Part shown: positions 447 to 64,000 of the stretch, in pieces
Position numbering within the stretch: position 1 is the first letter of the stretch
Layout of the letters: every line of letters begins with the position of its first letter
Assembly (NCBI RefSeq): GCF_001194135.2
Contig: NC_068981.1
Coordinates: forward strand, 129,381,377 to 129,445,376
DNA length: 64,000 nt
Direction: 5' to 3'
Source: Octopus bimaculoides
Taxonomy: Eukaryota
Notes under the pieces: model-generated
The model's database searches: none
Told to the model about the DNA's origin: nothing
What the model saw: the letters and a program-made list of their open reading frames with translations, nothing else
Translations under genes and position numbers: made by a program

Positions 447-517
447 GGCAGTTTAGCTTAAAGATAAAGCACTTGATGCATAATCACAGGGATGTGAGTT
501 CGAGTCTCATGGCTGGC
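447..517 (+). pseudogene. tRNA-Met(CAT)-like sequence, probably a SINE head or tRNA pseudogene
   Basis: GGCAGTT-TAGC...TG-CAT-AA...GTGAG-TTCGAGT-CTCAT-GGCTGGC: T-arm and B box intact, acceptor stem 6/7 pairs including G-T, anticodon stem only 3/5. Confidence 0.55.
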
Positions 518-898
518 TGGTAATGACTTTTTCTGCAATATATGGATAGTTTATCCTGTTCATGCTATTGTATTAGCATTATGATGTGTTTGAGAATAAA
601 TTATTTCTGTATCTTCCAGTAAATTCTATTTTTTTATCCCTCTTAGCAGTAAGTAAGAGTAGTAAATGTTCAGTGCCTTACTTGGGGAACAGCATACTGT
701 CAGTGTTGGTTATTATACTAATTGATAAATATTCATCTAAAAAGGTACAATTTTATTTCAACCTAGGTCAGATTGAGTATTTTATAACATTTGTTCTTCC
801 ATGCTAAGTGGGTTGGAAAGATCTGCAGTAAAGTGCATTACTATTTTACTTAATTCAGAGAATCTGATCCTAGTATGATTAGTCAGTGTTTAGTTTAA

Positions 899-13123: not shown

Positions 13124-16100
13124 AGATGCACTTAGAAGGAAGGAAGCGGGCTGTGACAAAGTATAGAAAACCACGCTCGCAACAGACTGTGCTACTCATA
13201 CATATAAATGTATACATATGCACACACAGAGTTGAAGCACTGTTTGATATTTTTCACCTTTTTGTACCCTTTTATATATTACAATTAGCTGTCATTTTTG
13301 ACAGTATGGGACCAGCTAGTGAAACTATAAAGATTAATGCATCACCAGCCATATTTTCTGATTTTTGCTAACACAATGTCATTCATATATTCTAACACCA
13401 ACAAAAGAGTGTTTTTGAAAAAATGTTTAAAATATAAGTGTTCCTTTGCGAGAGCTCACAATGGTCCAGGGGCTCTACTTTCTTGGTTTAGAAGCATTGC
13501 TTTAAAACTAGTGAGCATTTCTTCTCTTCGAAAGAAGGGTTCTGCCTGAAACAGAAGACTTTGTTCAGTATGTTTTCAAATTTACTGTCCCAATTATTTT
13601 TATTCTTGCTGAGGTACAACATCAGTATACATAGATTCTACCATTTATACTAATTATCTAATGTTTGTGTCTGAAAGGCACTGCAGTATTGTAGGGATAT
13701 AACAGGCAAATTATAAGGTCGACAGAAATTAGCAAGAAACAAGTTGAATATGGCCTGTAGGGTGTGCAATAAGAAACATAGAACTGGAAATGATAAAGTG
13801 AGTTAACAGTCAAAATATAAATAAATTGAAATCTAAATTATCAATACACAAACACACACACACACATGCTAAACATACAAAATTTTTGTAGAGTAAAGAA
13901 GAATTAATGACGAAAGTATTCAGTATAAATACCTGGAGTATGTGTGGGTAAACCTACATAGCATTCTTCATCACATCCCCTCTTGGCATCAAAATATATT
14001 CTACCAATCTGGAGTATAAAAAAAAATAGTGCACAGGAATTTTATAAATTATGTGAAAAATTTACAAAGCAAAAACATTACACAAGAAATAGAAAAATAA
14101 GCCAAAATCCCACCCCGCTTATCCCTTGAAATCTTGACTAAACTTTCAGAGGAAAGGGGGAATTTTTTCTTTAAAGAAAAAGGGGAAGAAAACAAAGAAA
14201 AAAATGAAATAGAGAAAGCAAAGGTGACAAAAGAAGTCCCTAAAGCATAGTGTCCCAAAGAGGGTGATATCACCCACTGGTGGGCAAAGAGTGAACTTGT
14301 AGAAAATGGTGGGCGATTTGAGATTTTGATGGGCAATATGAACATTTTGTGGGAGACAATGAATTTATAAAAATTAAGTCTGCATTTACTGACATCTAGG
14401 CATGCCTAGAATAAGGATGCACTTTTATCGATTTGACTAATCGCATGAGACGTCACTTTGTATTAAAAAAGCGGACTTGTTTATCGATTGAATATTTTTG
14501 TCGCAGTCATTGAGATGGTTGTCGTGTGCTAAAAATAGCAGCCAAAAGGCCTAAGCCTTAAATCATACTCCACCAGATTTTTTCTTTTTTGCATAATCGG
14601 ATGAAGTCCTGCCTATAGAATTCAAATTTGCAAAAGTTTTCTGAAAATTCTGAAAAATAAGTTATGTGGGGTTATATGTTGTGCATAATTCTGTGGCTTT
14701 GTATCAAAACAAGTGTTATTTTCAGGAAGTTGGCAAAATGTGCAGCCATGCACAAAATGAAAGCTTTGAAATCATGTTTCTTGACTGGGTGAAAATGATC
14801 AAACTTTAAACCTCTATAACTTTTTAAGAACATTTTTCTGGAAAAAGTCGAATAACTAACAATTTAGCTTGGAAAGGTACATTAATGAGCCAAATTAAAA
14901 AACTTTTGATAAACTTTTAATTTTTGAAATGCTGGCAGCCAAACGAACTAGATCTGTATTTGCTCCAGTAAAGACGTGTCATCTGACTCTGCTCTATCAA
15001 CTTCTCTTTGGGAATACCATACTGCCTTTCTGATGCTGTCTGTAGAAATTTGTTTTCACGTTTTCACTTTACTAAGGCCTCCAGTCAAGAAAATTTGTTG
15101 ACAGTTGTGATTTTTATTCCCTCTCCTTAGAACTGTCAATTACCAATGTGCGTTCTTTGCCATCAAACACTGACCGACGAAGCAATGAAACCTTCACGCA
15201 TGAAGTATCATTTGATGCAAAGCATTCTGACAAGAAGGACAAGCCATTATTATACTTTTTGCAACTGAGCTCCTCTTTCAAAAAGCAAGCATAAACATTC
15301 AACACACTACTCCAGGAAACTAGTAGACAGGAGAATGATGGCCGATTGCATCGTACAACATTGCATTGCTAAGTCTGGGAAGTCTCGCATAACTGAAGCA
15401 ACATTACTTTGCCCAGTTATTGAAGAGGTTTTGTCAACCGTTATGCATGAAAAATCTGATAACATTATGAAGATCCCACTTAGTAATAACACAATTTCTC
15501 GATGCATTGATGAAATGCCCAACAATGTCAAACATCAGCTCATTAATATTTTCCAGTGTTCTGAATTTTCTATACAAGTGGATGAGTCAACTGTTGAGGA
15601 CAATCAATGTTTGATTATGGTATATATTCGGTATTTCAGTGAAGACCTTCAACCTTGTGAGGAAATGCTGTTCACAGAGAAATTGCTGCTTGATTCAAAA
15701 GGTGCAACTATTTTTCAAACTCTCAAGTCTTTCCTTTTTGAACGTAGTATCCCACATAGTAATATTCTTGCCTGTGCATCTGATGGAGCCCCTTCAATGA
15801 TAGGAAGATACAGAGGTTTTTCATCTCTCCTAAAGCGTAAAATTTCCCACCAGATACTAACTGTTCATTGCTTTTAGTGGTAAAAAATATGAACAGTAGA
15901 TTGAATGATGTGCTACAGTTAGTTATCAAGACTTAACAAATTGAAGTCCAGTCCCTTGTCCGATTGAATTTTCCGTCAACTCTGTCTGAGAAATGATGAG
16001 GACCGTACCAAAGTGCAGTGGCTGTCAAAAGGAAACTGTGTTTTACGCTTTGTTGAACTGTTTCATATAATCATATCTTTCTTTGATGATACTCCAGTAT

Positions 16101-19100
16101 CTGCTTCACTATTGGCTGCAAGGTGCAATTTCTTTTTTCTTTGTGATATATTCACAAAATTAAATGATTTGAGTAAGTTATTGCAAGGAAACAGAAAAAC
16201 TCTTGTTGATTGTAAATCATTAATCACTCTGTCATTTCGAAATTGGTGTTGTATAAGACTAACGTTTCAAAACATTAATTTCCACAACTTTTTGAAAGAT
16301 GAATTGGTTGATGAGGATTTAACTACATATCGCAACTATTTACAATCATTGCACAATAACATGGTGGAGCAATTTCAAGATGTTATTGCACTGCATATTC
16401 CAAATTGGTATAGCAATCTGTTTGAGGTCGATGCAGTCAATTGTGAGGATGACGTTCAGGAGGAATTGATAGAATCACAAAATGACAATGATGCCACAAT
16501 GTGATATTGCCATAATGGCAAAGAAGGTTTGTGGTACCAACAGAGTATATTGAATTCCTACCCCAATCTGTGGAAACACCTGAAATTACTTTTGTTTGTC
16601 CTCCCTACCTCATACCTGGTTGAATCTGGTTTTAACTATGTTAGAGCTTTACTTTCCCATAAAAGAATTGGACTGGATGTGATACAACAAGGAAACTTTC
16701 GACTGAAGTTGACAAGTTTGAAACTGAATGTATTTGCAATAGCTGCATTGCACCAGACATGGTTCTCATTAAAAAGTTTTATTCTTTTCCTTTATAATAC
16801 AATCATTAATTATTTTTGCATTGGTAGTTCTGATCAATGGTTCATTTGGGAAAAATGAAAATCAGTGCAAAAGAAAGTGCAAGTTTCCAGAAGTTAATCT
16901 GTCTGCATAATATAGAGTTAACAGAATTTTATTCACCACTGATGGCAAAACTAAACTCACAATAAGGGATTTGTAAACAACCGCATATTTAGTCCAAACA
17001 GCACTAACAGAGCAATGAGTCTACAATATAGTGTATGTCAAATGATACAAGGGGGTGTTTTCCTAGGGGATTTTGCGTTGGGTGTGGTGTCAGGGTAAAA
17101 ATTTCTTTTTTTACACAGGTGGGCAATGGAGTATTTTTTGGCCGAGAGTGCAATTTGAAATGAAAGGTTTGGGAAACACTGCCCTAAAGTAATACACACA
17201 CACTACAGAAAAAAAATTAAGGGAAAAATTTTTTAAATACCCAGAGGAGAGAAAAGTGAAAAATAGAAAATAAAAAGGAGTGAAAATGGAGAAATGAAAG
17301 AAGCCAAGAGTTAAGATGTAGCAGCAGCAAGAGTAAAAGAAACATACTCTATTGTATTTTAAAGGTTCCAATATTACTTGTCCATCTGAAGCTGGTCTGT
17401 AATAGAAGCGTGAGTCTGCTGGTCGAAATGATACTTGTGTCACTTTCATATATGCTTCAAAGGTGCTATGAATTTGTAATACCTTATATGGAATCTTTCC
17501 CTAGTGAAAGAAAGAATAAATAAAAACATTAACTCAGTGGAGAAAGCAGTAATTAGATGGAGATAAGCTAATGAAGAAACCTCTACATAGATAGAAATAG
17601 CAAAATCGCTAAAACCACATCCTTATGACTAAAACTGAATGTAATCTAGATATACAAAGAAACAAAAAGTTCTTGGTTGGAAAGACTTTGAAATCATGTT
17701 AACCCTTTCAAGGTTGGCCTGGGATTAAAGTAGAACTTGGGTGAAAATACTGATGTTTCCATTTCTGATGGAGAATGAAAGAATCAGTCAAGGTAAAATG
17801 GAACAGAGAATGGATTTTAAAGGGATAAATATAGAAGACAAGATACAAATCAGATGGGACCCTCAATGGAAACAGCTGACCTATGAATTAATGTACATAT
17901 TAGTGTATTGAGAGAAAAGTCAAGCATAAGAGGAATTAGATGCAGTATGCAAGAGAGAAACTGCACTGGTTTGGTCATGTGATGTAGCTGGACACCGACA
18001 GCTCCATAAAGAAGTGTCATTCAAAGTGGATAGAATTTGTGGGAGAGGGAAACCCAGTAAGACATGGGATGAAGTAATGAAGGACAACCTCAGGATGCTG
18101 AACTTTTCGGATGAGATGACAAAGGACTGAGATACCTGGTGCCTTGCTGTACTCAAGAAGACCCATCCTCCACAGCAGAAGTATTAAGGCTGCATCTCCT
18201 GGTGAAGAGGATCAGTCTGCAAGAGTCCTGTGCTGGTGCCACATAAAAAGCAATCATGCCAGTGCCATGTAAAAGTGTTTGTGCTGGTTCCATGTTAAAA
18301 GCACCCAGCACACACTAAAATGGTTGGCATGCTCGTGCTCTTTCCAAAATTTGCACCATAACACCCTCAAGAGTTTCAGACCCCACTTCTGATTTCTCTA
18401 TTGATGTTCTGCAGTTGCATCAGGGTCTCCGGTTTGTTGACGTAAACCCTCTCTTTTAGGTATCCCGACAAGAAAAAATCTGGGCTAGAGAAGTCTGGGG
18501 AACGAAGTATAGGAATGGCATCTGGCCATAGAAATTAAACCAGACTAGAACCTGGTGCAGCTCTCTGGCTTGATGGCTCTGGTCAAACCAACCAACCCAT
18601 GTCAGCATGGAAAATGAACATTAAAGGATGATGATTACAGAACTAAAAACTGTGACGTTTTAGAAATAAAACCAGGAGTGTGTATCTTCATATACTAACA
18701 ACTGAGCTATGCATACATATTGGAGTATATAGCAATCACACTAAAATTCTAAAATATTATACTAATCATTATTGGTAATTCTGAAGGATAACTTAGCCAT
18801 ATTGACATCAGAATCAATCACTATATTAAAAAAAAGGAAAAAGTATTTGCAAAACAATGGTTTAACAAAATTAAAATTCCTGTAATTAGTTATAAAATTG
18901 GGAGAAAAAAATCATATGAAACAGGTGTTATCACTTACTGGATATACTCTATCAAAAATAAGTTTTTCTGGAATAGCATTTAAACTTCCTTTTGCAGTTC
19001 TGAGTGATACTGGTATAAATAGGGTCTATAATACAAAAAAAAAAAAAAAAAAAATCCAGTTGGTTAGAACAGCTTCAACAATTTTATATAGAGGAAGATT

Positions 19101-22100
19101 TAATAGTTGTAGCATATGACTCCACGAATTGGTGACCCCACTAGTGCTGGTGCTATAAAAAAAAATACCCAGTACACACTGTAAAGTGGTTGGCATTAGA
19201 AAAGGCATCCAGCTGTAGAAACCTTGCTAAAACAGACATTGGTGACCAACACAGTTGTCAGGATTGTCAGGCCCTGTTGAACCATCCAACCCATACCAGT
19301 ATAGAACATGGATGTTAAATATTGATAATGATGAATTGTAGCAATATAACACTGTGATTGGTGAAGGGTTCATTTATTAATTTCCAATAATACGGTATTA
19401 AATGTGTGATGATTAGTCATTACTCATTAACAATATAACACTAAATGAAAGAGTGTCATTAATTGTTGGCAATAAAAAATCCCAAAGCATATCAAGTGGT
19501 TACCACATGGGTTACTAACCAGTGTAGCACTTTATATGAATATACCTCAAATTGCTAATTTTATCTAATATTTTGGTTATGTGGAATTAAAATGAAAGGA
19601 GTAAATTGCAAACAACTTGCAGAGAGAAGTGCTGCCAGTTGAAAGCTCTGCATGCTAGCAAGCTTATGGGGCAATCAGAAGAGAATGCACGCTGTTTCAG
19701 GTTGGGCCTTCCTCTTGATGGTATCAGAGTGCACTGGCCCTCCTCACTGACATGAGAAATGGAAAAATAAAAAAAAAGGTCTGAACATTATAATAGCATA
19801 CCTGAAATTGAGTGACAATAAGGACTTGTCCAGAGAACATGCCTTCATATAGGGCAGCAGTGACATTCACACTGAACACAGCAATGTGGTAAGGTTTTAA
19901 TATTAACTAGACAAAGAGAAATATAAAATTTTGAAATATTAACAATAAAAAAACGAACACAGGATGGTATATATAGCTTAAAACTTATGAAGAATGCAAT
20001 GGTGTCATGTTATAAGAATCTAATGAAGGTTAGCTGAGAGTACCAAGAATTACAAATGAAAAAGGTTAACAATGAGAATTGTTACCAAATACTAGAAATG
20101 GTTGAAAGAATATTGCTCTGGTGCAGAGAATTCAGTTACATTTAAAGATGTAGAAAACACTGGGTTTGATAAGTGCTTAGCACTAGATCTATGGTTTGAA
20201 GAGGATGGGAAAGATTTTACCTGAATTAGACCCCAGACTATCATGTGACATTTCTAGGAAAATCTGATGCCTATTTGTTGTAGTGAGGCAATTTGAGATA
20301 CAAAGTGTATACCTATATAAACATTTTCAATGGATTTAATTTCAAAACTTACAACATACAAATGACTTATCTACCCAGTCACTTCAATTTATATAGTACG
20401 TTTGTCCAACCCATGCCAGCACTGAAGATGGACATTAAAAGATGGTGATGTTTTAGTTTATCACACATCTACATCTATGCACATAAATCTATATGTAAAG
20501 TATATATAAAAAAAAAAAAAAATCAAACAAGATGCAATACCATTTCATTCAGACTCAATTATCCTGTTAAACAAATTCATGTATAAGAGGAAAAAATTAA
20601 CTGAAAATATTTCCCTTTATTTCATGGCAGATAGTTGAGACTTCTAGTTTGTGGCTAAAGGAGCATTGATTAAAATATTAAAAATCTAATTAAAGGAATC
20701 AAAGGCATATATGAAATAGTCAAGTTGGGAAAAATGTATATGTTTGTATACTGTGAAAATTTGCAAGCACTTGCATCTTTTCAACGCATATACAATATAG
20801 CCAAATTTGCTAACTTAACCAACTGATTCCTGCTAATCCAAACTACAAATAATTTCCACAACTTCTTGTTATTTGCTAAATATGAAATAATTAAAAGTAT
20901 AATGAATATTTCAACAAATATATTAAGAAATTTCAATATATCCTGCAAAACTTTTTATACTTTCTTTCAAAGATCCGATCTCTAAAAGGCAAAAATTAAA
21001 AGGTTTGAGATATATAATCTAAGAATAAAGATATCAACTTTTTCCATTAACATTTAAGTCTAATGAAGTAGGAGCTGGTTTGGAATATAGAGAATTGTAT
21101 AGCATTAACACATAAAAAGTAAATCTATAATGAACTCACTGGATCTGTGTCAATATCGGAAATGTTGTGAAATTTAGTAAGTGTTGTACCATTGCCTTTT
21201 TCTATGCCAAGTAACTGTAAACTGCTCTGGTTCATACTGCAACTAAACTCTGCAATTACAATCTGGAGAAAAGTAAAGAACAATGAACAAATCTAAAGGT
21301 GACAAGGTGATGCAAATGTAAGTAAGGCAATTGTCATAAGAGAAACGAGAGTACCTTCTTTTATAAAAAATGAATAAATAAAAATATTATAATTAAAATT
21401 CAGATATCAAAAGTAGACTAATGTACAATATAACTAAATTTATCAAGTGAGGTTATAATTCAAGTCACTTGTCACTCTTATATTACTAGTGTTTACATGT
21501 GCACTAACAAAATTCCTAGTGAAACAAGATAGAGTAGGTTCTAACTGAAAAATAGTTATGCAGTTATTCAGATGGAAATTGACAAAATACTTACATTTAC
21601 TGGATTGTTATTTTGTATTGTAAATGTTATACTACGGTGTTCCCCAACCCCTGTTGTGCCAAAATCAAGTTGACCCTTGGACTTTTCTGGTCGATGATGT
21701 ATGACCTACAAAAAATAGACAAAAATACAATGAAAAACAGACAAGAAAAAAAACAAAAGAATGCACTAGAATATTAACTAGTTACTGTTGAATGGACATA
21801 AATGAGAAAATGTGGTTTGCTTACCTTAAGAAGACCACTGTATACGATGATAGGAATACTGAAGCTAGATGCATTTGTCTGAATGATTATTTGAGAGGTG
21901 AAATGAAGTGATGTAGTGTTTGGATGGAAATGCAACAAAAATGGCACTAGAATCTCCTGGGGACGAATTATCACAGGCTTAGAGAAGTTTCTGATCTGAA
22001 TAAAACAGAATATTAAGAAAGTTAAAGACACCACTGATAATATTACTAAAATAAAAATACACTGATAACTACTGGAGTAGATGTTCTCTATATCATTACA

Positions 22101-34758: not shown

Positions 34759-37274
34759 AATATCAACTGTTCCAGAATATGGTTTGTTAACGAAATTGTT
34801 TCTTACAGAGTAACTGAAATACATATAAGTAGGGGTAACCCCACATAAAGATGTGAGAAGATGTATTTGCAAATCTATCAATAGCAAGAACTAGAAAAGC
34901 ACTGAGAGAGCACAGACCTTCATCAAGCAGCCCATTTCCACCCATACACACGCATGCTGAAAATCGCCCAATTTCCCAAACCAATGCTGGCAAAAACATA
35001 ACCTCCTTGGCGGGGTTCAAAAAAGAAATTACACAGCCATACCGATACTATTTTATCCTCCTCCCATATTTATCTCGGACATCATCATCAACACTGTCTC
35101 TGCTTTCACCACAATCACCACAATCAGTTTCTTTATAGAGTTGAAAATCCATTATCTGATACTCATGGGACTGAGATTGTTGCAGATTATTGATTTTTCT
35201 AATTTCGGAGTGCTTTATTAAAAAAAAAAAAATTAAAAAAAAAAAAAAAGCATCTACAAAACAGAACAGTTTGAGGATAGAAACCAGGTCTAAACACAAT
35301 AGCTTATAGACATACTCTGAATGTAGTTCTATATAAATCTTTAATAATTTTTTTTATACTTAAGACCATCAGAAATGTTAAGATATCAGCCTTTACCCAC
35401 GTTGTCATGCTTTGAGTAAAAGGTTACAGCATAGATTAGATTACTTAGATAAGTTTCAGCTGAAGTGGACTCAGGCCATGTCTAATTCAATAGTACCACC
35501 TGGAAGCTATTGACCACCATGTCTAATTCAATAGCACACAGTCAGCCCTGGGGAACTGTAGCCCATTCAAGCAGAGGGTTATTGTTTTCAGAGACATATC
35601 TGGGTGTGGGTGGTTTATCTGGTATTTGTTGGGGGTAATCATCTAGGGATCGTTTGAATGTCATAAAGTCACTTTCCTCCTTTATGTGTGTCTGGCACGA
35701 CGTTGAAGAGAGCAGGGCCAATTGAGGTGAAATAGTTCTGTCACAGTGTTGTGATACGACAGGAACATTTCTGTAGTGGATGGATGGCACGGGGGCTAAG
35801 CCTCGGACGAATTTTAAAGATGGGCAATGTTGATGGAATATTTTCCACATACAGATGATATAGAGCTCACAGCGGCAGTGGAGGGAGCAAAGACTGAGCT
35901 TTTTGAGTTGATCCCAATAGTCAAGGCTTGTCATGTCATCCTCCACAGACCTCCGCCAAGCAGCTCATTTTAAGATAGATACAAGAGTAAAATTACTAAT
36001 AGAGAAACGAAAATAAACTTCGGAAACAGCAATGCCACTGTAGGTTACGTGGAAACGATGAACGTGTTTTCAAGGGAGATAATCAAAGAACGTAACATTG
36101 CAATACTTCATTTGAAGTAAATATAACAAATGAAAAATCCTTCAAGAATCCATAAAAATTCCTGTATCACTACCAAAATTTCATCGGCTGTGTGGTAAGT
36201 AGCTTGCTTACCAACCACATAGTTCCGGGTTCAGTCCCACTGCATGGCACCTTGGGCAAGTATCTTCTACTATAGCCTCGGGCCAATCAAAGCCTTGTGA
36301 GTGGATTTGGTAGACGGAAACTGAAAGAAGCCCATCGTATATATGTATATGTATGTATGTATGTGTGTGTTTGTCCCTCCAACATTGCTTGACAACCGAT
36401 GCTGGTGTGTTTACGTTCCCGTAACTTAGCGGTTCGGCAAAAGAAACCGATTGAATAAGTACTAGGTTTACAAATAATAAGTCCTGGGGTCGATTCCTTC
36501 GACTAAAGGCGGTGGTCCAGCATGGTCGCAGTCGAATGACTGAAACAAGTAAAAGAGTAATCTGTTCCTTATGTCATTACCAACCTTTCCTGCAAGTTTC
36601 ATCAAATACTGTTCACAACTTTGAGTTATTTTGCACAGACGGACAAACCAAAGCCCATGAAAACATAACCTCCTCCTTTTCGGAGGTAAATATATGTGTA
36701 AGTGTATATACATACACAAGGGTTTTTCTTTCCCCTTTAGTCTTGCTTCTGACAATCCATGGTTAGGTTTTCCGGTATAAAATATGAAAATTTGCAAGCT
36801 ACATGAAATGCTTACATGAATGTTAAGCCATTTGTAAATATACTGTCCGAGCTGTTTATATGCATGAAATAGTCTACTTGTGATTTGTTGTTCAAGAAAA
36901 CTGTTCATTACACAATTTTTTTCATTTAGCAAACCATTCATACATGCTCTGCCAGCACTTATACGTACACACAGACTACTCTTGGTTTATTGTACAAATT
37001 TTACACTGGCTAAATGAATGAGATCTCAATCACTATATGCATGTATAGTCTGTGGTTTGTTGATCAAATTTCAGCTGGTGTAAGTTCACCTTTTTTCAGA
37101 AAGAACATACATATCTATACATATACACACCATTATCATTTAACATCCATGTTCCATGGTGGCATGTGTTGAATGGTTTGACAGGATTGGTTAGGTCTAG
37201 CGGTTGCATTTTGCATAAGTGTCTACTTTGGCAAAGTTTCTAGCTTCCTAATGCCAACCATTTTACAAGACATT

Positions 37275-37305
<31 letters not shown>

Positions 37306-40300
37306 TATCATGCAGTTGAAGGTTTAAAATGCCCTGTATGATATACATAGCTTTGTACATAAACATGAGTATGCATATATATATATATATATANNNNNNN
37401 NNNNNNNNNNNNNNNNNNNNNNNNNNNNNNNNNNNNNNNNNNNNNNNNNNNNNNNNNNNNNNNNNNNNNNNNNNNNNNNNNNNNNNNNNNNNNNNNNNNN
37501 NNNNNNNNNNNNNNNNNNNNNNNNNNNNNNNNNNNNNNNNNNNNNNNNNNNNNNNNNNNNNNNNNNNNNNNNNNNNNNNNNNNNNNNNNNNNNNNNNNNN
37601 NNNNNNNATAGATGAAGTATATTTGCCACTTAAATGTGGCTGACCTCTAAGGGTGGATGTTACTGTTGCTTTTAGCCCTAGGAGAACATCTCCTCCAGCT
37701 GGCTATTGACACACATCTGTGTCCTGTCTGTATTTGCAAAGGAAGTCATCCTTCCCATCATGATCTGCAATACGCACGGACTCGAGTTTCTGGGTATTTA
37801 CCCGTCCTCAGCGTACGACNNNNNNNNNNNNNNNNNNNNNNNNNNNNNNNNNNNNNNNNNNNNNNNNNNNNNNNNNNNNNNNNNNNNNNNNNNNNNNNNN
37901 NNNNNNNNNNNNNNNNNNNTTAGTAAATGAAGTAAAATGCATATGTTAAATGAATTCTTTTATTTCCAATATATGTTTTGAAGATTACAAGATGTACCTT
38001 CCAAAGGAATAGGTGATGCTGATAAGGATGTAATCTTCTCCTCAGGGAAATACATAGGAACCAGCTTAACCCCAAGACATTTTAACCAAATGTGATAACT
38101 GTAGTTAGAGAAGATTGCTACGTAACTTATTTGAAAAAAACCTTTGGAGGTTGGAACGTATGTATTATATATTTGTATATATATATGTATTATATATTTG
38201 TATGCAAGTAGCATTCTTTGTTTCCAATCTGCCATGAAAACATGTCCAGTTATGGAGAATATTAACTTATTTGGAAAAGGCAAGAGTTGGTGACAAGAAT
38301 GGCATTGGCTGTAGAAAGACTGTCTAAAATTGCGCCCCACCCATGCAAGCATGGAAAAGTGGATATTGAAATGATATACACATATACATATATTCACACA
38401 TTTATACACAAACACACACACTAGTGCATCTTGGTAATATATGTTGAATCTACACTCCTGAAAAAAATCACTAAGCAAACTGCAAGCAATCTGAAATTGA
38501 AGCAATTTCTCAGTGAAATATATTAATATATCACACTAAAACACATTTTCGTTTCAATTGTCTGTAGTACAACAAAGAATTTTCAAAGAAACCACCAGCT
38601 CTAAGATGAAGAAACTAAAAAGTGAAATCATACAGCAGCTTTTTCATAGAAGACTCCAACGAATGTATGTCATTTTTTTTTAAAGATACCATAAACTTCC
38701 CAGGTAAGCCAAGTTTCATTAATAGAGCATGATAAATTGACAAAGACTGTTTAGATATCTGTAGTACATCGTTAAACTTGGTCAACTATATTTGGATATG
38801 TTTCACTGTATACAGGTAGGTATATATATTTTGAAGCACATTAAATGCTTATAAACCTTTTTACCACATCTTTACATATCTAGAAGTTTTAGTTATTCTC
38901 TTGAATTTCATTGTATGTAACTGCTAGCCTGAAATACTTCTGCATATAAAAGGATAAGGATGAATCAATATATGATAAAAGATTCTTTTTCTTCCCTCAT
39001 CTCTCCATCACTACCCCAGGTATGATCAACAGTTGGAGAATTTTCAGTTGCATCTGCAATGTCACCTCATATGTACTTTGACTGTTTAGAAAACAAGTCA
39101 GTATTAGTTACACTAACTAGTGTATGCACAAATCTTAACTAGTACAATATGTATGAATAATGCACACAGAGGATATAGTAATTAGAGAGAAAATATTACT
39201 TAGAGCTAAGCCAAAGAAGGATTACAGTGAAATAGTGAGGCTAGGTTAGAAATTTGGGTCTATATAAAACTGAAACACAAATTCTAGAGATAATGAAAAT
39301 AAGAAAAGGAAACAACTAACCTGATATTTAAAAGACCCTTGGGTTGTGTGAATATATAATGTATTTTCAACTGGGCCAACCTGACGCGCTAGAAATACAA
39401 CATCAAATGTTGTGTTTCCTCCAGGAGGAACCATCTGTAAGAGATAGAATAAGAATTTATTACAAATCAGATTCTACAAAGAAATAAAAGATTAATTAAT
39501 TTTCATTAATTCACTCAATGATAGTTTTAATTGACAAAAACAAAGTAATAATTATGTGGTAGTGATGATAACCCAGAAAGGATACACGACTATAAAGATA
39601 GCTTTACAAGACCTAACTTTAAAATGCTAGCACAGAAATTATAGATGTTTATATATAAATACGTACAAATGTATGCCAACATTTCCAACATAAATTTAGC
39701 AAATTTGAATTATTGCTGCAAGGTTCCTACAATTAATGCTCAACTATTTAGCAGGAATGGTATTATTTTCGAAGTTGTATAGCCTGTGAAAAGTTTATTT
39801 GCATCTTGTCTCATTATACAACACAATGTAGCTTTGTTTAAATTGAGGACCTTGACACTGTAGTCATGCTTTTCAACAACAACAAACAAAAATGAAGAGA
39901 CCTGATAGGAAAAACAAAAAAAAAAAAAAAATACATATATAAGTATCTTACTTTATCTTGAAAAAATGAACAGTGAAAATGTGCTGTACTGCCTGATATG
40001 GACAACAGGTGTAAACTGGTTTTTGTGTCAGCATTATGTACAGAAACCTGTTGTAGATGAGGCATACCCACAGGGCTACAAAATAGACAAAATATTTGAT
40101 TTTAGTTATTTACGTAGCAAAAGTTGGTACAATTTGTAACACAAGGGAGAGAGAATAGAGCAATATGCTTTATGATACTTAGTTTGAACTGAAAAGTTTA
40201 ATGGTAATTAAATTTGTTTTGTTCAGAGCATAAAGTTGGTAATGTATAAGTTGAATGTAAGAAAGTTCTAGATACACAATTTTAACAAGAGGATGTGCAT

Positions 40301-52300: not shown

Positions 52301-54307
52301 GATAAAAATGGCTCAAACTCAAGGTTACTCAGCTCTCATCAATTAAGTCGAAAGAAAGACCATTGTGTTTATACTGTGGGTTGTACTGAGAATATATAGT
52401 TCTATATTTAAAATACTTCTTAATACCCTACATGATCGTAAAAAATCGTTTTCGTTCATTTGAATTATTTTAGCTTCTATATGAAAATTATTCTAGTAAA
52501 TAAATATTTAGTTTAATGATCACTTTCATTATTACGATTGGCTAATTGTTGGACCAAATGAAAGTTGCTTAACTTTCTGTGATCCGACTTACCAAGTTTT
52601 ATTTAAGGGAATAATTTTAAAAAATCAGTTGATATTACACATATATATAAAAGACTGTAAACTCATGTGTGGTGTGTGTGTGCGCGCGCGCGGGCCCTAG
52701 GAATGAGGCAGAAAGTTCAGAGGTAATTTTTCAATGAAAACGAAATAGTGAGGGAATCGAATTTTGCACATCAAAAATTCGACAAGTTTAATCTTTTACA
52801 CGCAAGATCTGTTTATGATAAGCGTCATTACACACACAATAGTCTAGATTGTGAAAATAATAGCTAACAGTAGATGATTATCAAACTGAAGGTGTGCACA
52901 GTACTTAGGACATTAATTTAAATTGATTTCAATTAAATGCTGTAATGAGAAAAAAGGAGAAATAATAGATGTCCTTGAGGATAATATGAAAAATAACCAC
53001 GCTTCCAAAGACTAGCAAAATAAAGATGTAAAATAAAAGACAATATTGACGATGATATAGGTGTTTATGCCCAAAGTAATATTTGTTATAAAAATAATAC
53101 TAAGAATAAAATCCCCTCAGATAACGAAAGCTATTTTGGCTCCAAATCCACTTGTTATATTTTCCTAATTGTCCATCTGTCTACATATTAAGACAATTTG
53201 AAGGCTGGAAATAAAAGTAATGACAGGGTTGCTTGATGGAATGCGAGAAATGATAATTGATCAAGTGTGTTATAACGTAGTAATATATCTAAGCGAATCC
53301 TTCCTGTATAACAGTGCTGATATATAAATCACTAAAGGAGAGAATGAAGCTTGAAGCACTGACGACGACGTATGGACGGATAATATACAGCGTGATGTAT
53401 TAAACAGGAGATTTACAATGGGTCATCAACAGACGGGCGCGCGTATATACACATATAAAGGATAAACATACTTACTTCTAATGGTAAATGGTGTAAGTCT
53501 CCAACTATATATGTAAGATGTTTGTCAGTTTGAATAAAAGCTGTGGAGAAGCGATAATAAAAATAAAAATACAGTTACATGAAGATAACATAAAAATAAC
53601 AACAATCACAATTATTAATGTAATTTTATTAAAGTGTCATCCGTTCATTAAGAACTAAACAGTAAATATCAGTCTTGCTGGTAAACAAGCCATATAGTAG
53701 TTCTATAGCCTCCATACACGTTAGCATACAATGAACACAAACACATACGTATATAGAGAACAATTACAAAGATAGGGGACCATTTTTTTCTTTTGTTTAC
53801 CGGAAATTATATCAAATATGTATTCAGATGGAGGATTTTGCTTTTAATTATCATTAATGTAATGTTGTTATGGATAATACAGTAGCGAATTTAAGGAACT
53901 AAGCCAGTCGACTCAATACAATTTCCGTGAGGGAGAGTGTTTCTTTATAACAAACACATGTAAATGCCTAAAGCAATAAAAATATGTAAATCATATGTAA
54001 ATACGACGAAATGGGTATCAAAATTTATTGTTCGTCTGTACATACACAAAAGCACGTTATAAACGACATGAAGTCGAAAAGAAATAAAACCTATTTTAGA
54101 CTGGTAAGTGAACAAGAGAAATTATAGTAAACAGGATATGTTTAAAAGTGGATAGTTTGGTAGTGCAGTGAAAGAAATTAGAGAAAATAAGCAGTTAGAA
54201 ATAACGTACTATTGCAAAAATAGTCGACAGAAAACAGCTGAGGAAAACAGTAATGGGTATTTTCGTTACAAAAACATACAAACAGACCTATAATCAAATA
54301 TATTCTC

Positions 54308-58194: not shown

Positions 58195-58659
58195 CAGCAA
58201 GGCCGCAGTCAAATGATTAAACAAATAAAAGACTATATATGTGTGTGTGTATAATGTGTTGTCTAAAAATCCATGAGTCAGGAAAAACTGTGTATGTTGT
58301 CATTAATAAAATACAGTATTATTGTCTCATAATAGGCAAATTACCAACTGGTAATGCTTAGAAATTCCCCTCAACTAAGGGTGATACTTTGACATATTGA
58401 GAGAAGCAAAAGGCCATTCACTTGATAGGCTTAGAATGGCTCTAACCTATGTCCTTAATTCTCTGGGGTTTATAGTCACAATAGAAATCAACTTGAAAAT
58501 TGGTTATTTCTTGAGTGGAACATTAAACAGAAACACTTGTACCTATAAACCTTTTTAGAATCTGAAAGACTGGCTGATACAATTTTCAGGTACTTGGTTG
58601 CCAGGGTTAGCTGAAGAATCTACAGCTATCTTCAAAAGAGATTTTTGACACCACAGTCA

Positions 58660-59170
58660 CATACTACAATGAGCTTATTGTTGCCAGTGGTTTCAAGGGA
58701 AGGATTAGTTACATACTTGACCCTAGCACCATTAAGAGAAAGTGCCACTATAAATAATATAGTAACTAGAATAAGAACTAATCAAGGAAACTTCAGGGAG
58801 CTATTACCACTGCTGGTAACACGAGCCTCCTTTCTCGGAGTGAAGGGTAGATTGTATAATGTTCGTGTTCAGACTACAATGCTGCACGATAGCGAGTTGT
58901 GGGGTTTAAATGCAGAAGGCTTGCAAAAGCTAGAAAGAAATGAAATAAACTTTCTCTGGGTGGGTAAGTAATATCAATGTACATGGAAGTCAGAGCACAA
59001 ATGAAATGAGAGAAAAACTGGGTGAAGGAAATTCAAATATAGTGTAGTGTGCAAGAGAGAAGGCTGCATTGTAGTTGGTATGCAATATGTATGGAAGATG
59101 ATTCCTGCTTAAAGCAAGTTTCATGTGCTCCAAATTAGTGGAAGCCATGGATTTTGGAGTTGGTAGAATT
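58660..59170 (+). mobile_element. RTE-like LINE 3' fragment
   Basis: ORF 58645..58971: LGVKGRLYNVRVQTTMLHDSELW...LERNE. Confidence 0.65.
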
Positions 59171-61542: not shown

Positions 61543-62828
61543 TTGGGTCATCCCATAAATAATGTGGTTATTTTAATTGCATGCACTAAAAGTCGGAGGG
61601 AGATGGGATAAACTACCTGCATCAACTTGCTATAAAAGCAGGTAGTAATTCTACCTTGACTTATTCTTAATGCAAGCTTTGAAGAGTGTAGTTCAATTTT
61701 AACAGTTATTTTTCCAAAGCTATAATGGAAGTGATAAGGGAGCATATTCAGTATATTTTGCTTTATGAGTTCAATAAAGGCAACAACACAACAGAAAGTG
61801 CAAGGAATATTAATGCAGCATATGGGGATTGGACAATAAGCATAAATCAGTGTCAATGGTGGTTCCAGAAATTCCGAGCTGGAAACTACAGCCTAGTAGA
61901 CAAGCCTCATCCTGGGAGATCTGTAGACTCGGCGAGGACATCCTGCAAATCCTGGTGGAACAAAATCCCATCGTAAATGTTGAGAAACTAGCAGAAAAGC
62001 TTGGATTTGGTCATTCAACTATTCATCAACACCTGTGTGCCATTGGAAAAGTCAGCACATTGGGTCAATGAGTTCCTCACAAACTTTCCAAGTCTAATCA
62101 CATGAAGAGAGTGAATCTGTGCTCTTCTTTGCTGTCACATCTAAGGAATGAACCTTTTTTAGACCGAATAGTGACTGGTGATGAGAAATGGGTTCTCTAT
62201 AAAAATGTCAAGTGCCAAAGACAGTAGGTAGGGAAAGGAGAAACACTGGCAATCCAGACTAAAAAAGGTCTTCACCCACATAAGGTGTTGTTACCTATTT
62301 GGTTGGATATGAAAGGTTTAGTCCATTTTGAACTTTTAAACCCAAACCAAACAATAACAAAGGTTATCTACTGCAAGCAGATTGAGCGGCTTAAGTCAGC
62401 ACAAGAAGAAAAATGATCACTTTTGGTTTCAAGATGAAAGGTGTTTTTCCATCAGGATAATGCTCGGCCACATACAGTGAGGATGACATTCCAAAGGCTT
62501 GAGCAGTTTGAATGGGAAACGATGTCCCGCCCACCATATTCGCTGGACACTGCTCCATCTGATTATCATTTATTCCACAGTCTTCAAAATTATATGGCTG
62601 GAAAAAATATGAATTCTGTAGATGAGGTCAGAACAGTACTGGAGGAGTATTTTTCATCATGGACAAGTGGGTTTTGGAAGATGGTCCTTGCAAGTCTAAC
62701 AAATAGATGGAAGAGCATTGCAGAAAATGAAGGAGAGTATATTTTAGATTAAAAAAGGGCTTTGTTTATCTTAATTTTGAAAAACAAAAGAAATATAAAA
62801 AAACTTCATTATTTATGGGATGACTCAA
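61543..62828 (+). mobile_element. Full-length mariner (DD34D) element, transposase broken by frameshifts and stops
   Basis: TIR TTG(G/A)GTCATCCCATAAATAATG, 1286 bp; motifs LLYEF...WFQKF, TGDEKWV, HQDNARPH, PPYSLDTAPSDYHLF (34 aa between D2 and D3). Confidence 0.92.

Positions 62829-63057: not shown

Positions 63058-63062
<5 letters not shown>

Positions 63063-63127
<65 letters not shown>
63063..63127. repeat. (TA)n microsatellite (others at about 12547-12625, 13089-13120, 25817-25855, 54314-54347, 59257-59290)
   Basis: Direct inspection. Confidence 0.95.
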
Positions 63128-63130
<3 letters not shown>

Positions 63131-63420
63131 TAGCAGAGATACCCGGCATTGCCCATGTCACATAGAATTCAAGAATTGGACTTTTCTTTTAAATTTTCTC
63201 TAATGAACTGGAATACCTATGATTTGAATTTCATCAAAATTGCAGATGAAGAATTTTAATGAGGGTTCTTTCCCACTTTACACACCCTAACAAAAATTCT
63301 AATCATGACACATTTATCCCATGCTACTCATCGTTATGACCAAATTCCAAAATTCAAATCTTATGGAATCTATTGAAAAGTTTTTGCTCCTGAAAAATGG
63401 AGCTCTAAAATGTTGGAGTT

Positions 63421-64000
63421 AAGGACACAGGTTCGTGTGTCACATGGCTAGCTAGAGGCGATGGCCTCTTGGAGCTAATCAATGGCAGCATTCGTCCTAT
63501 TTTTTTGGACTGCCATGTTGGCTTGGCGATAACTATTAATATCCAGTACCACTGCCGTAGTCTCCTTTAGAGAGACTTAGAAATATTAATATTTCTATTT
63601 CTGAAAACCAGTGGATGTATTCCATTGAATTTAGGTAAATAATCCTTCGTACAGACGGTCAGTAGCGACGCCTGCTGGGTTCGGCTGCTCTATATTGACA
63701 AGGGGCAATACCCCGAAACTAGTCTGTAGATGCCAGACCAGCAAGGGGAAGCGGCTGACCTCCCCTGTTCGAAGGTTATAAAGGACACAGGTTCGTGTGT
63801 CACATAGCTAGCTAGAGGCGATGGCCTCTTGGAGCTAATCAACGGCAGCATTCGTCCTATTTTTTGGACTGTCATGTTGGCTTGGCGATAACTATTAATA
63901 TCCAGTACTGCTGCCGTAGTCTCCTTTAGAGAGACTTAGAAATATTAATATTTCTATTTCTGAAAACCAGTGGATGTATTCCATTGAATTTAGGTAAATA
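63421..64000 (+). repeat. 360-bp direct tandem repeat (one full unit plus 220 nt of a second; continues past window end)
   Basis: 63421-63640 vs 63781-64000: 5 substitutions and 1 indel. Confidence 0.9.
63689..63730 (+). ncRNA. Type I hammerhead ribozyme, U3-A8 core variant, in a 360-bp repeat unit
   Basis: Stem I TCTATA/TGTAGA, core TTGACAA, stem II GGGG-CAATA-CCCC, GAAA, stem III AC-TA-GT (palindrome ACTAGT), triplet GTC at 63722-63724. Confidence 0.85.

What the first reader, a model, noticed from the sequence alone, without database searches (positions are those of the whole stretch)
63421..64000. Candidate non-LTR retrozyme: 360-nt structured tandem unit with a complete hammerhead ribozyme bearing a compensatory U3-A8 core
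Seen: the unit 63421-63780 repeats from 63781. It contains a type I HHR (stem I TCTATA/TGTAGA, extendable to a distal helix TGCTGG 63673-78 / CCAGCA 63738-43 across an internal loop; core UUGACAA; stem II GGGG/CCCC; GAAA; palindromic ACUAGU stem III; GUC site, cleavage after 63724). The rest of the unit is dense in hairpins: AGAGGC/GCCTCT, ATGGCAG/CTGCCAT, AGTCTC/GAGACT, a perfect 20-nt palindrome at 63578-63597, AGGGGA/TCCCCT, and CCTTCG/CGAAGG enclosing the HHR domain. Established: C3-G8 is a tertiary Watson-Crick pair in HHRs and U3-A8 swaps can retain activity. Metazoan non-LTR retrozymes are tandem repeats of a few hundred nt with one type I HHR per unit, giving monomeric and circular RNAs, and palindromic stem III loops allow dimeric HHRs. 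Inference: this is a cephalopod retrozyme or viroid-like circRNA family with a rare core variant. The double change argues for selection on catalysis. I cannot check whether it has been described.
Basis: partly seen in the sequence, partly recalled or inferred. Interest (0 to 1): 0.92.

Follow-up and report, generated by a model that had tools for sequence, protein, structure and literature searches.

The report
Hammerhead-ribozyme tandem repeat (retrozyme-like), U3-A8 core
The end of the window holds a 360-base tandem repeat carrying a self-cleaving hammerhead ribozyme motif of the kind that makes small circular RNAs in animals ("retrozymes"); a diverged second copy elsewhere in the window shows the motif is conserved, but this kind of element and its unusual core pair were already described.

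Summary

The hammerhead (HHR) motif is not chance:
- A relaxed descriptor finds only this site in both strands of the window (about 0.013 expected per window, about 5e-5 within the repeat).
- A covariance model built only from four experimentally validated retrozyme HHRs ranks it first (25.3 bits).
- The same model found a second HHR at 37773-37817 (-), inside a 212-nt island between assembly gaps. The island is a diverged homologue of the unit (nhmmer E=1.6e-10).
- That copy has the canonical C3-G8 core. Against it, the finding shows U3-A8, three double compensatory changes in helix I, a preserved palindromic helix III and compensated hairpins outside the ribozyme.

So this is a real HHR-bearing, non-coding, highly self-paired tandem-repeat family that best fits metazoan non-LTR retrozymes.

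It is not a new kind. Mollusc retrozymes (350-390 bp) were described in 2020, and natural U3-A8 covariation in 2014 (Schistosoma Penelope-like elements).

Untested: cleavage, circular RNA, the second HHR (beyond 64000), genome-wide copy number and cephalopod origin. Rfam models miss both copies.

The parts
63421..63780 (+). Repeat unit 1 (360 nt, GC 45.8%). It is non-coding and highly self-paired.
   Evidence: repeat; no long ORF, no protein relatives; MFE -129.8 kcal/mol, z -4.8; circular fold 64% paired.
63781..64000 (+). Repeat unit 2, cut by the end of the window. It is 97.3% identical to unit 1. Its HHR would lie at about 64048-64090, outside the window.
63689..63730 (+). Type I hammerhead motif: UCUAUA-UUGACAA-GGGG(CAAUA)CCCC-GAAA-CUAG-UC/UGUAGA. 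Helix I is 6 bp and helix II 4 bp with G10.1-C11.1. Helix III is A15.1-U16.1 over the palindromic CUAG. The predicted cleavage site is GUC, between 63724 and 63725.
   Evidence: 25.3 bits, top hit of the model built from validated retrozyme HHRs; covariation against copy B.
63695..63701 (+). Core box UUGACAA: U3 (63695) and A8 (63700) replace C3 and G8. U4, G5, A6 and A9 are canonical.
   Evidence: Copy B has CUGAGGA at the same alignment columns.
63673..63743 (+). Extended HHR domain: distal helix UGCUGG/CCAGCA and GGC/GCC (63683-85/63732-34) continue helix I across internal loops.
   Evidence: The HHR-compatible fold is -23.4 kcal/mol against an MFE of -25.0 for the 71-nt domain.
63644..63775 (+). 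Long imperfect hairpin closed by CCUUCG/CGAAGG, with the HHR at its tip. It contains the AGGGGA/UCCCCU hairpin (63744-63766).
63424..63441 (+). Hairpin GACACA/UGUGUC. Copy B keeps the stem with a shorter loop.
63454..63469 (+). Hairpin AGAGGC-GAUG-GCCUCU. Copy B has GGAGGA-GAUG-UUCUCC: two double compensatory changes, one G-C to G-U change, and an identical loop.
63482..63516 (+). Hairpin AUGGCAG/CUGCCAU with inner GUCC/GGAC. Its minus strand gives a weak Rfam Hammerhead_1 match (seen in unit 2 at 63838-63881) that lacks a competent core.
63559..63597 (+). Hairpin AGUCUC/GAGACU, followed by a perfect 20-nt palindrome (63578-63597).
37608..37819 (-). Copy B: a diverged member of the same family (GC 46%) in the opposite orientation. 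It is a 212-nt island between N gaps 37394-37607 and 37820-37919.
   Evidence: Smith-Waterman score 56 against 17.3 +/- 2.2 for shuffles; nhmmer E=1.6e-10; 82% identity over the best 120 aligned bases.
37773..37817 (-). Copy B hammerhead with a canonical core: CGUACG-CUGAGGA-CGGG(UAAAUA)CCCA-GAAA-CUCGAG-UC/CGUGCG. Positions 10.1/11.1 are a C.A mismatch, or an extra nucleotide after A9.
   Evidence: (21.8 bits).
63062..63127 (.). (TA)33 microsatellite 293 nt upstream of the array, a possible insertion context. A (TA)n run also lies next to copy B, at 37370-37393.
   Evidence: A (TA)n target preference is reported for some Penelope-like elements. Weak evidence: TA runs are frequent in this window.

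Best explanation
The locus is the start of a tandem array of a non-coding, roughly 360-nt element of the metazoan non-LTR retrozyme type.

Shown: each unit encodes, on the + strand, a type I hammerhead ribozyme of canonical animal architecture. Helix I is 6 bp and helix II 4 bp. Loop 2 ends in AAUA. Helix III is minimal and palindromic, and the cleavage site is GUC. The C3-G8 tertiary pair is replaced by the isosteric U3-A8.

Inferred mechanism, taken from the published retrozyme model:
1. The array is transcribed as a multimer.
2. Helix III of a single motif is only one A-U pair over a CUAG loop, so two ribozymes in a multimer (neighbouring units are the obvious partners) pair through their ACUAGU palindromes to form an active double hammerhead.
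3. Cleavage after C63724 in each unit releases 360-nt monomers with 5'-OH and 2',3'-cyclic phosphate ends.
4. A host RtcB-type ligase circularises them into a compact, highly paired circRNA.
5. The circle serves as a rolling-circle template for a reverse transcriptase supplied in trans (probably from a Penelope-like element), giving new tandem insertions.

The helices, the core conservation, the covariation and the existence of a family are shown. Cleavage, circularisation and mobilisation are inferred.
For: 1. The motif is present and non-random. It is the only descriptor hit in 128 kb. Expectation is 0.013 per window and 5e-5 in the repeat.
2. Model R1 was built only from coral, mussel and axolotl retrozyme HHRs that were shown to cleave (sequences; model). 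It ranks 63689-63730 first in the window at 25.3 bits, full length.
3. R1's second hit, 37773-37817 (-), lies in a 212-nt island homologous to the unit.
4. In the comparison of A with B, 27 of 28 cells are paired. Four pairs change on both sides (three in helix I, plus position 3 with 8). Two pairs change on one side to G-U or back. Slid controls give 18-58% paired and 0-1 double changes.
5. All nine other invariant core positions (U4, G5, A6, A9, G12, A13, A14, A15.1, U16.1) are identical in A and B, although helix I differs at 8 of 12 bases.
6. Helix III stays palindromic across a symmetric 2-nt insertion (CUAG against CUCGAG).
7. Hairpins outside the HHR are also compensated.
8. The architecture matches the validated axolotl Ax330 (GAAA-CAUG-UC) and mussel Mg353 (GAAA-CGCGCG-UC) motifs.
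9. The unit properties match the published definition of metazoan retrozymes (150-450 bp tandem units, GC <50%, no LTR/PBS/PPT, self-paired; mussel units are 350-390 bp). The unit is 360 nt with 46% GC and no ORF longer than 78 codons. Its six-frame translations have no protein relatives, and its folding z-score is -4.8.
10. The HHR-compatible fold is within 1.6 kcal/mol of the MFE. Monomeric helix III costs +5.6 kcal/mol, while the ACUAGU self-duplex gives -4.8.
11. U3-A8 occurs naturally in other HHRs.
Against: - No Rfam hammerhead model reports the site, even at E<=10. This counts for little, because Rfam also misses copy B, which has a canonical core.
- R1's E-values are rough. An unrelated 20.9-bit hit turned up in 570 kb of metagenome DNA, so the bit scores alone are not decisive.
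- Only one complete HHR of the array is visible. The published operational criterion of two consecutive units with complete HHRs cannot be checked.
- Only two family members are available, so the covariation rests on a single pairwise comparison.
- Copy B has a C.A mismatch at the normally conserved G10.1-C11.1 pair and may be a relic.
- No RNA evidence, no target-site duplication and no Penelope-like element were seen in the window.
- PLE-type HHRs, including the family in which U3-A8 was first seen, cleave poorly in vitro.
Confidence: 0.75

Rival explanations
1. It is a decayed satellite. The repeat descends from an HHR-bearing element, but the array is now an inert tandem repeat, and U3 and A8 are two ordinary transition mutations that inactivated the ribozyme or left it barely active.
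For: C-to-U and G-to-A are the commonest kinds of substitution, and all five substitutions between units 1 and 2 are transitions. Unit 2 has already weakened one hairpin, with a C.A mismatch and a G.U pair in the ATGGCAG stem. PLE-type HHRs cleave poorly in vitro. There is no expression evidence.
Against: The two changes fall exactly on the two partners of one tertiary pair and restore a Watson-Crick pair. Meanwhile 0 of 9 other invariant core bases differ between A and B, at about 20-30% overall divergence. Helix I is fully compensated despite 8 of 12 changed bases. That pattern is expected under continued selection on the fold, not under decay.
Confidence: 0.15
2. It is part of a Penelope-like element. 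On this reading the repeated sequence is a pseudo-LTR or partial tandem of an autonomous or truncated PLE, and the HHR is a PLE-type hammerhead.
For: PLE pseudo-LTRs carry type I HHRs with palindromic or absent helix III, and U3-A8 was first seen there. PLEs form tandem and inverted insertions and often target (TA)n, and (TA)n runs flank both loci. Copy B may have the extra nucleotide after A9 that is typical of PLE HHRs. A 2026 preprint derives retrozymes from PLE pseudo-LTRs.
Against: The repeat period is 360 nt head-to-tail with no ORF between units, whereas PLE tandems repeat the whole multi-kb element. No RT- or GIY-YIG-like ORF appears among the long ORFs of the window, though a full domain scan was not done. 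Copy A has the canonical architecture (helix I 6 bp, helix II 4 bp, helix III insert present), not the min-HHR one (helix II 6-8 bp, helix I 4-5 bp).
Confidence: 0.08
3. It is a chance resemblance: a hairpin-rich tandem repeat that happens to contain a hammerhead-like string.
For: Rfam does not report it. The core deviates at two of the conserved positions. Model R1 gave an unrelated 20.9-bit hit in 570 kb of other DNA.
Against: Shuffle expectation is 5e-5 within the repeat. An independent homologous copy keeps the motif with a canonical core and compensatory changes.
Confidence: 0.02

Closest known systems
Metazoan non-LTR retrozymes (Cervera & de la Pena 2020, PMC7229834), especially the Mytilus galloprovincialis family (350-390 bp units)
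   Same: - Head-to-tail repeats of a few hundred bp, GC <50%, non-coding, predicted highly self-paired RNA.
- One type I HHR per unit, with a 6-bp helix I, a 4-bp helix II with a 5-nt loop, a palindromic minimal helix III and a GUC site.
- The host appears to be a mollusc.
   Different: - The core has U3-A8 instead of C3-G8.
- There is no detectable sequence similarity to the published mussel unit outside the core boxes. This is judged by eye; it was not aligned formally.
- Expression, circularity and cleavage are unknown here.
- Only 1.6 units are visible.
Axolotl and newt satellite HHRs (HHR_Amex1 type)
   Same: Helix III is reduced to a single A15.1-U16.1 pair capped by a palindromic tetraloop (Ax330 has CAUG, here CUAG). 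In amphibians this makes the motif weak as a monomer and efficient as a dimer.
   Different: The host phylum and the unit sequence differ. The amphibian core is the canonical C3-G8.
Penelope-like element min-HHRs of Schistosoma mansoni (Cercyon) with U3-A8 (Cervera & de la Pena 2014, PMC4209133)
   Same: Natural covariation of the 3-8 tertiary pair to U-A. Helix III is palindromic or absent, implying dimeric action. Both are associated with retroelements.
   Different: Those motifs have a long helix II (7-8 bp), a short helix I (4-5 bp), an unpaired base after A9 and usually no helix III. They lie in pseudo-LTRs or as dispersed single motifs, not in 360-nt tandem units.
Rfam Hammerhead_1 (RF00163)
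   Same: The topology is the same and loop 2 ends in AAUA, as in the model consensus GUCC-CAAAUA-GGAC.
   Different: Copies A and B are not reported even at E<=10, far below the 34-bit gathering score.

Membership tests
Hammerhead ribozyme, type I | Invariant core bases U4 G5 A6 A9, G12 A13 A14, the A15.1-U16.1 pair, and H17 not G | tested here: met
   UUGACAA / GAAA / U-C at 63695-63724. The same bases occur in copy B.
Hammerhead ribozyme, type I | C3 and G8, which form a Watson-Crick tertiary pair | tested here: inconclusive
   The identities are not met (U3, A8), but pairing potential is kept. Homologue B has C3-G8 at the same columns, which is a change on both sides. Natural U3-A8 HHRs exist. 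Whether this one is active needs an assay.
Hammerhead ribozyme, type I | Three helices around the core with helix I open, supported by covariation | tested here: met
   Helix I keeps 6/6 pairs, with three double and two single compensations. Helix II keeps 4/4 in A and 3/4 in B. Helix III is palindromic in both. Overall 96.4% of cells are paired, against 18-58% for slid controls.
Hammerhead ribozyme, type I | Match to the curated Rfam covariance models (RF00163 and its clan) at gathering score | tested here: not met
   No hit at gathering score, and none at E<=10. Copy B, with a canonical core, is also missed, so the model is insensitive to this family.
Hammerhead ribozyme, type I | Site-specific self-cleavage giving 5'-OH and 2',3'-cyclic phosphate ends | not testable with these tools
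   This needs in vitro transcription of monomer and dimer constructs.
Metazoan non-LTR retrozyme | Short head-to-tail tandem repeat, 150-450 bp per unit | tested here: met
   Period 360/359 at 97.3% identity, with 1.6 units visible. Definition.
Metazoan non-LTR retrozyme | At least two consecutive units, each with a complete HHR (criterion of Li et al. 2026) | not testable with these tools
   The second HHR would lie at about 64048-64090, beyond the window. Criterion.
Metazoan non-LTR retrozyme | GC <50%, no LTR/PBS/PPT, no coding capacity | tested here: met
   GC is 45.8%. The longest stop-free frame is 78 codons, and the six-frame translations have no protein relatives. LTR, PBS and PPT motifs were not searched for. 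Between the visible units the repeat is directly head-to-tail with nothing intervening.
Metazoan non-LTR retrozyme | RNA predicted to be stable and highly self-paired | tested here: met
   MFE -129.8 kcal/mol with z -4.8. The circular fold is -126.8 kcal/mol with 64% of bases paired.
Metazoan non-LTR retrozyme | Multiple dispersed copies or families in the genome | tested here: inconclusive
   A second diverged locus lies 26 kb away. The rest of the genome could not be reached.
Metazoan non-LTR retrozyme | Expression as monomeric linear and circular RNA | not testable with these tools
   No transcriptome access.
Metazoan non-LTR retrozyme | Co-occurrence with autonomous Penelope-like elements in the genome | not tested
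   No RT/GIY-YIG ORF was noticed among the long ORFs. Only nine ORFs were scanned against Pfam, and a 64-kb window cannot decide this.
PLE pseudo-LTR min-HHR | Min-HHR architecture: helix II of 6-8 bp, helix I of 4-5 bp, an unpaired base between 9 and 10.1, helix III absent | tested here: not met
   Copy A has a 6-bp helix I, a 4-bp helix II with no extra base, and a 4-nt palindromic insert. Copy B could be read with an extra C after A9. Definition.
PLE pseudo-LTR min-HHR | Location in direct repeats that flank an RT-GIY-YIG ORF | tested here: inconclusive
   The units abut directly with no ORF between them. Upstream are 293 nt of unique sequence, (TA)33 and a mariner pseudogene. Downstream is unseen.
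Viroid-like RNA with ribozymes in both polarities | A competent self-cleaving motif on the minus strand as well | tested here: not met
   The descriptor finds nothing on the minus strand. The only minus-strand signal is a 15-bit Hammerhead_1 match that lacks C3, G8, A15.1 and U16.1.

The most novel reading that the evidence does not exclude
This would be a previously undescribed retrozyme family of a mollusc (possibly a cephalopod). Within it, sister lineages carry either C3-G8 or U3-A8 in an otherwise canonical, loop-bearing type I hammerhead, and both are catalytically active as dimers. That would be the first natural covariation of the catalytic-core tertiary pair inside a circRNA-producing retrozyme, as opposed to PLE min-HHRs. 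It would offer a natural matched pair for studying how the 3-8 pair tunes cleavage and ligation.
Probability: 0.4. Interest if true: 0.5.

Novelty: new member of a known kind. Interest (0 to 1): 0.42.

Why it matters
If active, the element adds a mollusc lineage to the animals that make abundant ribozyme-processed circular RNAs. It would also give a natural, internally controlled example of the C3-G8 to U3-A8 swap: one family, and apparently one genome, holding both versions. The swap otherwise rests, as I recall, on mutagenesis, and in nature on low-activity PLE motifs.

There is a practical lesson too. The Rfam hammerhead models miss both copies. Genome annotation by Rfam alone would overlook this family, and a model seeded with retrozyme HHRs that tolerates U3-A8 would be needed for a census.

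It does not reveal a new kind of system.

Tried and rejected
- Rfam at gathering score and at E<=10 on ever smaller slices gave no hammerhead hit for A or B. I treat this as model insensitivity, because B has a canonical core.
- A weak minus-strand Hammerhead_1 hit (15 bits, 63838-63881) was examined and rejected as a ribozyme. It lacks C3, G8, A15.1 and U16.1, and unit 1 has a different sequence there.
- Extending the window failed. Exact-protein look-ups of two ORFs near the end were not on record.
- A composite six-frame translation of the unit found no predicted protein anywhere, so no further copies could be fetched that way.
- Pattern scans gave nothing. The copy-A pattern had 0 hits in metagenome and viral contigs. 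A relaxed A/B pattern returned 120 or more metagenome stretches. None of the 80 fetched as loci and screened with model R1 is an HHR at the matched site.
- Organism identification was incomplete. The best relative of a TMEM131-like exon is only 41% identical, from an unnamed ENA assembly. The closest named one is an oyster protein at 33%. Cephalopod origin stays unverified.
- The upstream 293 nt (63128-63420) has no similarity to the unit, to B's flanks or to anything else in the window, apart from TA runs.
- R1 hits at 22028-22078 and 52317-52348 (15.5 and 13.1 bits) lack GAAA or stem II and were dismissed.
- An attempt to score the double-hammerhead dimer in dot-bracket form failed because the structure is not nested. 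Only duplex energies are reported.
- MAFFT misaligned the 3' halves of the six HHRs, so the model-guided alignment was used instead.

Full report
**Observation**

Positions 63421-63780 recur from 63781 to the end of the window, with 97.3% identity over 221 nt and spacing 360/359. The two copies differ by five substitutions, all transitions, and one T indel. Tandem Repeats Finder does not list the repeat, because fewer than two copies are visible.

The part of the unit that holds the ribozyme (63641-63780) occurs only once in the window. The repeat itself therefore offers no internal comparison for the ribozyme.

**Is the hammerhead (HHR) motif more than chance?**

I wrote an RNAmotif-style type I descriptor. 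It accepts C3-G8 or U3-A8, helix I of at least 5 bp, helix II of at least 3 bp, loop 2 of 3-10 nt and any helix III insert up to 14 nt. It hits only 63689-63730 in both strands of the 64-kb window.

Dinucleotide-preserving shuffles give 0.013 hits per window for both cores together. They give 1 hit in 20,000 shuffles of the 580-nt repeat.

Rfam is negative. No hammerhead family reaches gathering score, and none is listed at E<=10 on 901-nt or 141-nt slices.

I therefore built an independent test. I took four retrozyme HHRs that were shown to self-cleave (coral Amil224, mussel Mg353, axolotl Ax353 and Ax330) from the supplement of PMC7229834. I aligned them and turned them into covariance model R1. 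Searched with filters off, R1 ranks the candidate first in the window at 25.3 bits, full length.

R1's E-values are rough. An unrelated 20.9-bit hit appeared in 570 kb of metagenome DNA. I give weight to the rank and to what follows, not to the E-value.

**A second family member**

R1's second hit (21.8 bits) is at 37773-37817 on the minus strand:

- B: CGUACG-CUGAGGA-CGGG(UAAAUA)CCCA-GAAA-CUCGAG-UC-CGUGCG

It lies in a 212-nt island between two runs of N (37394-37607 and 37820-37919). That is the usual fate of repeats in short-read assemblies.

The island is homologous to the unit well beyond the ribozyme:

- MAFFT aligns about 210 nt.
- The local alignment score is 56, against 17.3 +/- 2.2 for shuffles.
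- nhmmer gives E=1.6e-10.
- The best 120 aligned bases are 82% identical.

The alignment runs through the 63780/63781 junction of the array, which confirms that the unit is continuous there. No further copies are present in the window.

**Comparison of A with B**

On the model-guided alignment, 27 of 28 cells form standard pairs.

- Helix I keeps all six pairs although 8 of its 12 bases differ. There are three double changes (U-A to C-G, C-G to G-C, A-U to G-C) and two one-sided G-U changes.
- Position 3 with 8 is U-A in A and C-G in B.
- Helix III is palindromic in both, despite a symmetric 2-nt insertion (CUAG against CUCGAG).
- Slid-partner controls give 18-58% paired and 0-1 double changes.
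- All nine other invariant core bases are identical in the two copies.
- The one blemish is a C.A mismatch at 10.1/11.1 in B. It can also be read as an extra base after A9, as in Penelope-like element (PLE) HHRs.

Outside the ribozyme:

- The hairpin AGAGGC-GAUG-GCCUCU of A is GGAGGA-GAUG-UUCUCC in B. That is two double compensations and one G-U, with an identical loop.
- The GACACA/UGUGUC stem is kept with a shorter loop.

With only two sequences this is a single pairwise comparison. Even so, the pattern is what selection on an RNA fold produces, and not what decay produces.

**What it is**

The unit has these properties:

- 360 nt and 45.8% GC
- no stop-free frame above 78 codons, and no protein relatives for its six-frame translations
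- folding z = -4.8 on the + strand and -5.2 on the - strand
- 64% of bases paired as a circle
- the HHR at the tip of a long imperfect hairpin (63644-63775)

The published description of metazoan non-LTR retrozymes matches. It specifies tandem units of 150-450 bp, GC below 50%, no LTR/PBS/PPT, type I HHRs and highly self-paired circRNAs of 170-400 nt. The mussel family has units of 350-390 bp.

The ribozyme has the "canonical" animal architecture defined by Cervera and de la Pena: helix I 6 bp, helix II 4 bp, and helix III a 1-2 bp stem capped by a small palindromic loop. It does not have the PLE min-HHR architecture. Its GAAA-CUAG-UC segment parallels axolotl Ax330 (GAAA-CAUG-UC) and mussel Mg353 (GAAA-CGCGCG-UC). 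Loop 2 (CAAUA in A, UAAAUA in B) ends in AAUA, like the Rfam type I consensus CAAAUA.

**How it probably works**

- The HHR-compatible secondary structure of the 71-nt domain is within 1.6 kcal/mol of its MFE.
- A monomeric helix III (one A-U pair over a tetraloop) costs +5.6 kcal/mol.
- The ACUAGU self-duplex gives -4.8 kcal/mol. The corresponding ACUCGAGU duplex of B gives -10.7.

As in newt and axolotl satellites and in PLE HHRs, this predicts poor cleavage by a lone motif and cleavage through a double hammerhead in multimeric transcripts. The remaining steps are taken from the published model and are inferred here. They are release of 360-nt monomers, circularisation by an RtcB-type ligase, and reverse transcription in trans, probably by a PLE.

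**Comparison with what is known**

The U3-A8 core is not new. Cervera and de la Pena (2014) reported it as a natural covariation in Schistosoma mansoni Cercyon PLE HHRs, with about 1,300 genomic hits. That is the only paper in the held library that mentions it.

Mollusc retrozymes were described in 2020. A 2026 preprint derives retrozymes from PLE pseudo-LTRs. No held paper that mentions both hammerhead ribozymes and cephalopods describes a cephalopod retrozyme.

The element is therefore a new member of a known kind. Its particular point of interest is that C3-G8 and U3-A8 versions occur in one family with canonical architecture.

**Host**

Cephalopod origin could not be verified. A TMEM131-like exon (6459-7505, minus strand) has its best relative at 41% identity, in an unnamed ENA assembly. 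Its closest named relative is a Crassostrea virginica protein at 33%. The host looks like a mollusc whose genome is not in the protein collection.

**Limits**

- The second HHR of the array lies beyond the window, so the criterion of two consecutive complete HHRs is untested.
- Copy number, target-site duplications, the presence of PLEs, expression, circularity and catalysis are all unknown.
- All attempts to reach more of the genome failed.

**Verdict**

The novelty is modest.

Noticed in passing
window 37608-37819 (-), between N runs 37394-37607 and 37820-37919: A second, diverged copy of the same repeat family with a canonical-core hammerhead (37773-37817). It is flanked by assembly gaps, so an array has probably collapsed or gone missing there.
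   Followed up: yes
window 63838-63881 (-), equivalent to 63479-63522 in unit 1: The minus strand of the ATGGCAG/CTGCCAT hairpin gives a 15-bit Rfam Hammerhead_1 match (GUCC-AAAAAAUA-GGAC-GAA). It lacks C3, G8, A15.1 and U16.1. Unit 1 differs at the core, and copy B has ACC/GGU at the equivalent stem. It is either a coincidence or a relic of an inverted HHR.
   Followed up: partly
window 63421-64000: All five substitutions between unit 1 and unit 2 are transitions (63446 G/A, 63483 T/C, 63513 C/T, 63550 C/T, 63551 A/G). Two of them weaken the ATGGCAG stem without compensation.
   Followed up: partly
window 63062-63127 and 37370-37393: (TA)n microsatellites lie next to both family members. Some Penelope-like elements are reported to insert into (TA)n, but TA runs are common in this window (seven in 64 kb).
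   Followed up: partly
window 63128-63420: There are 293 nt of AT-rich unique sequence between (TA)33 and the first unit. It has no similarity to the unit, to copy B's flanks or to the rest of the window, so its relation to the element (leader, promoter, or simply flank) is unknown.
   Followed up: partly
window 61692-62752 (+): A Mos1-type mariner transposase pseudogene broken into several frames (HTH_48, E=8e-20). It ends about 300 nt before the (TA)33 run.
   Followed up: partly
window 6459-7505 (-): A long open exon with a weak TMEM131L Ig-like match. The closest named relative is an oyster protein at 33% identity, and the best hit overall reaches only 41%, so the host genome seems absent from the protein collection.
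   Followed up: partly
window 15269-16504 (+); 17930-18127 (+); 35545-35964 (-); 58615-58968 (+); 10420-10770 (+): ORF fragments that look by eye like a hAT-type transposase, LINE reverse-transcriptase C-terminal tails and a second mariner-like piece. None matched Pfam at E<=0.01.
   Followed up: partly
window 447-518 (+): A tRNA-like sequence just above the Rfam gathering score (29.8 against 29 bits). ARAGORN does not call it, so it may be a degenerate or SINE-derived tRNA.
   Followed up: partly
window 37700-37819 and 63650-63790: The Rfam hammerhead models miss both copies, even at E<=10, although copy B has a fully canonical CUGANGA/GAAA/GUC core. This is a sensitivity gap for this type of retrozyme HHR.
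   Followed up: yes
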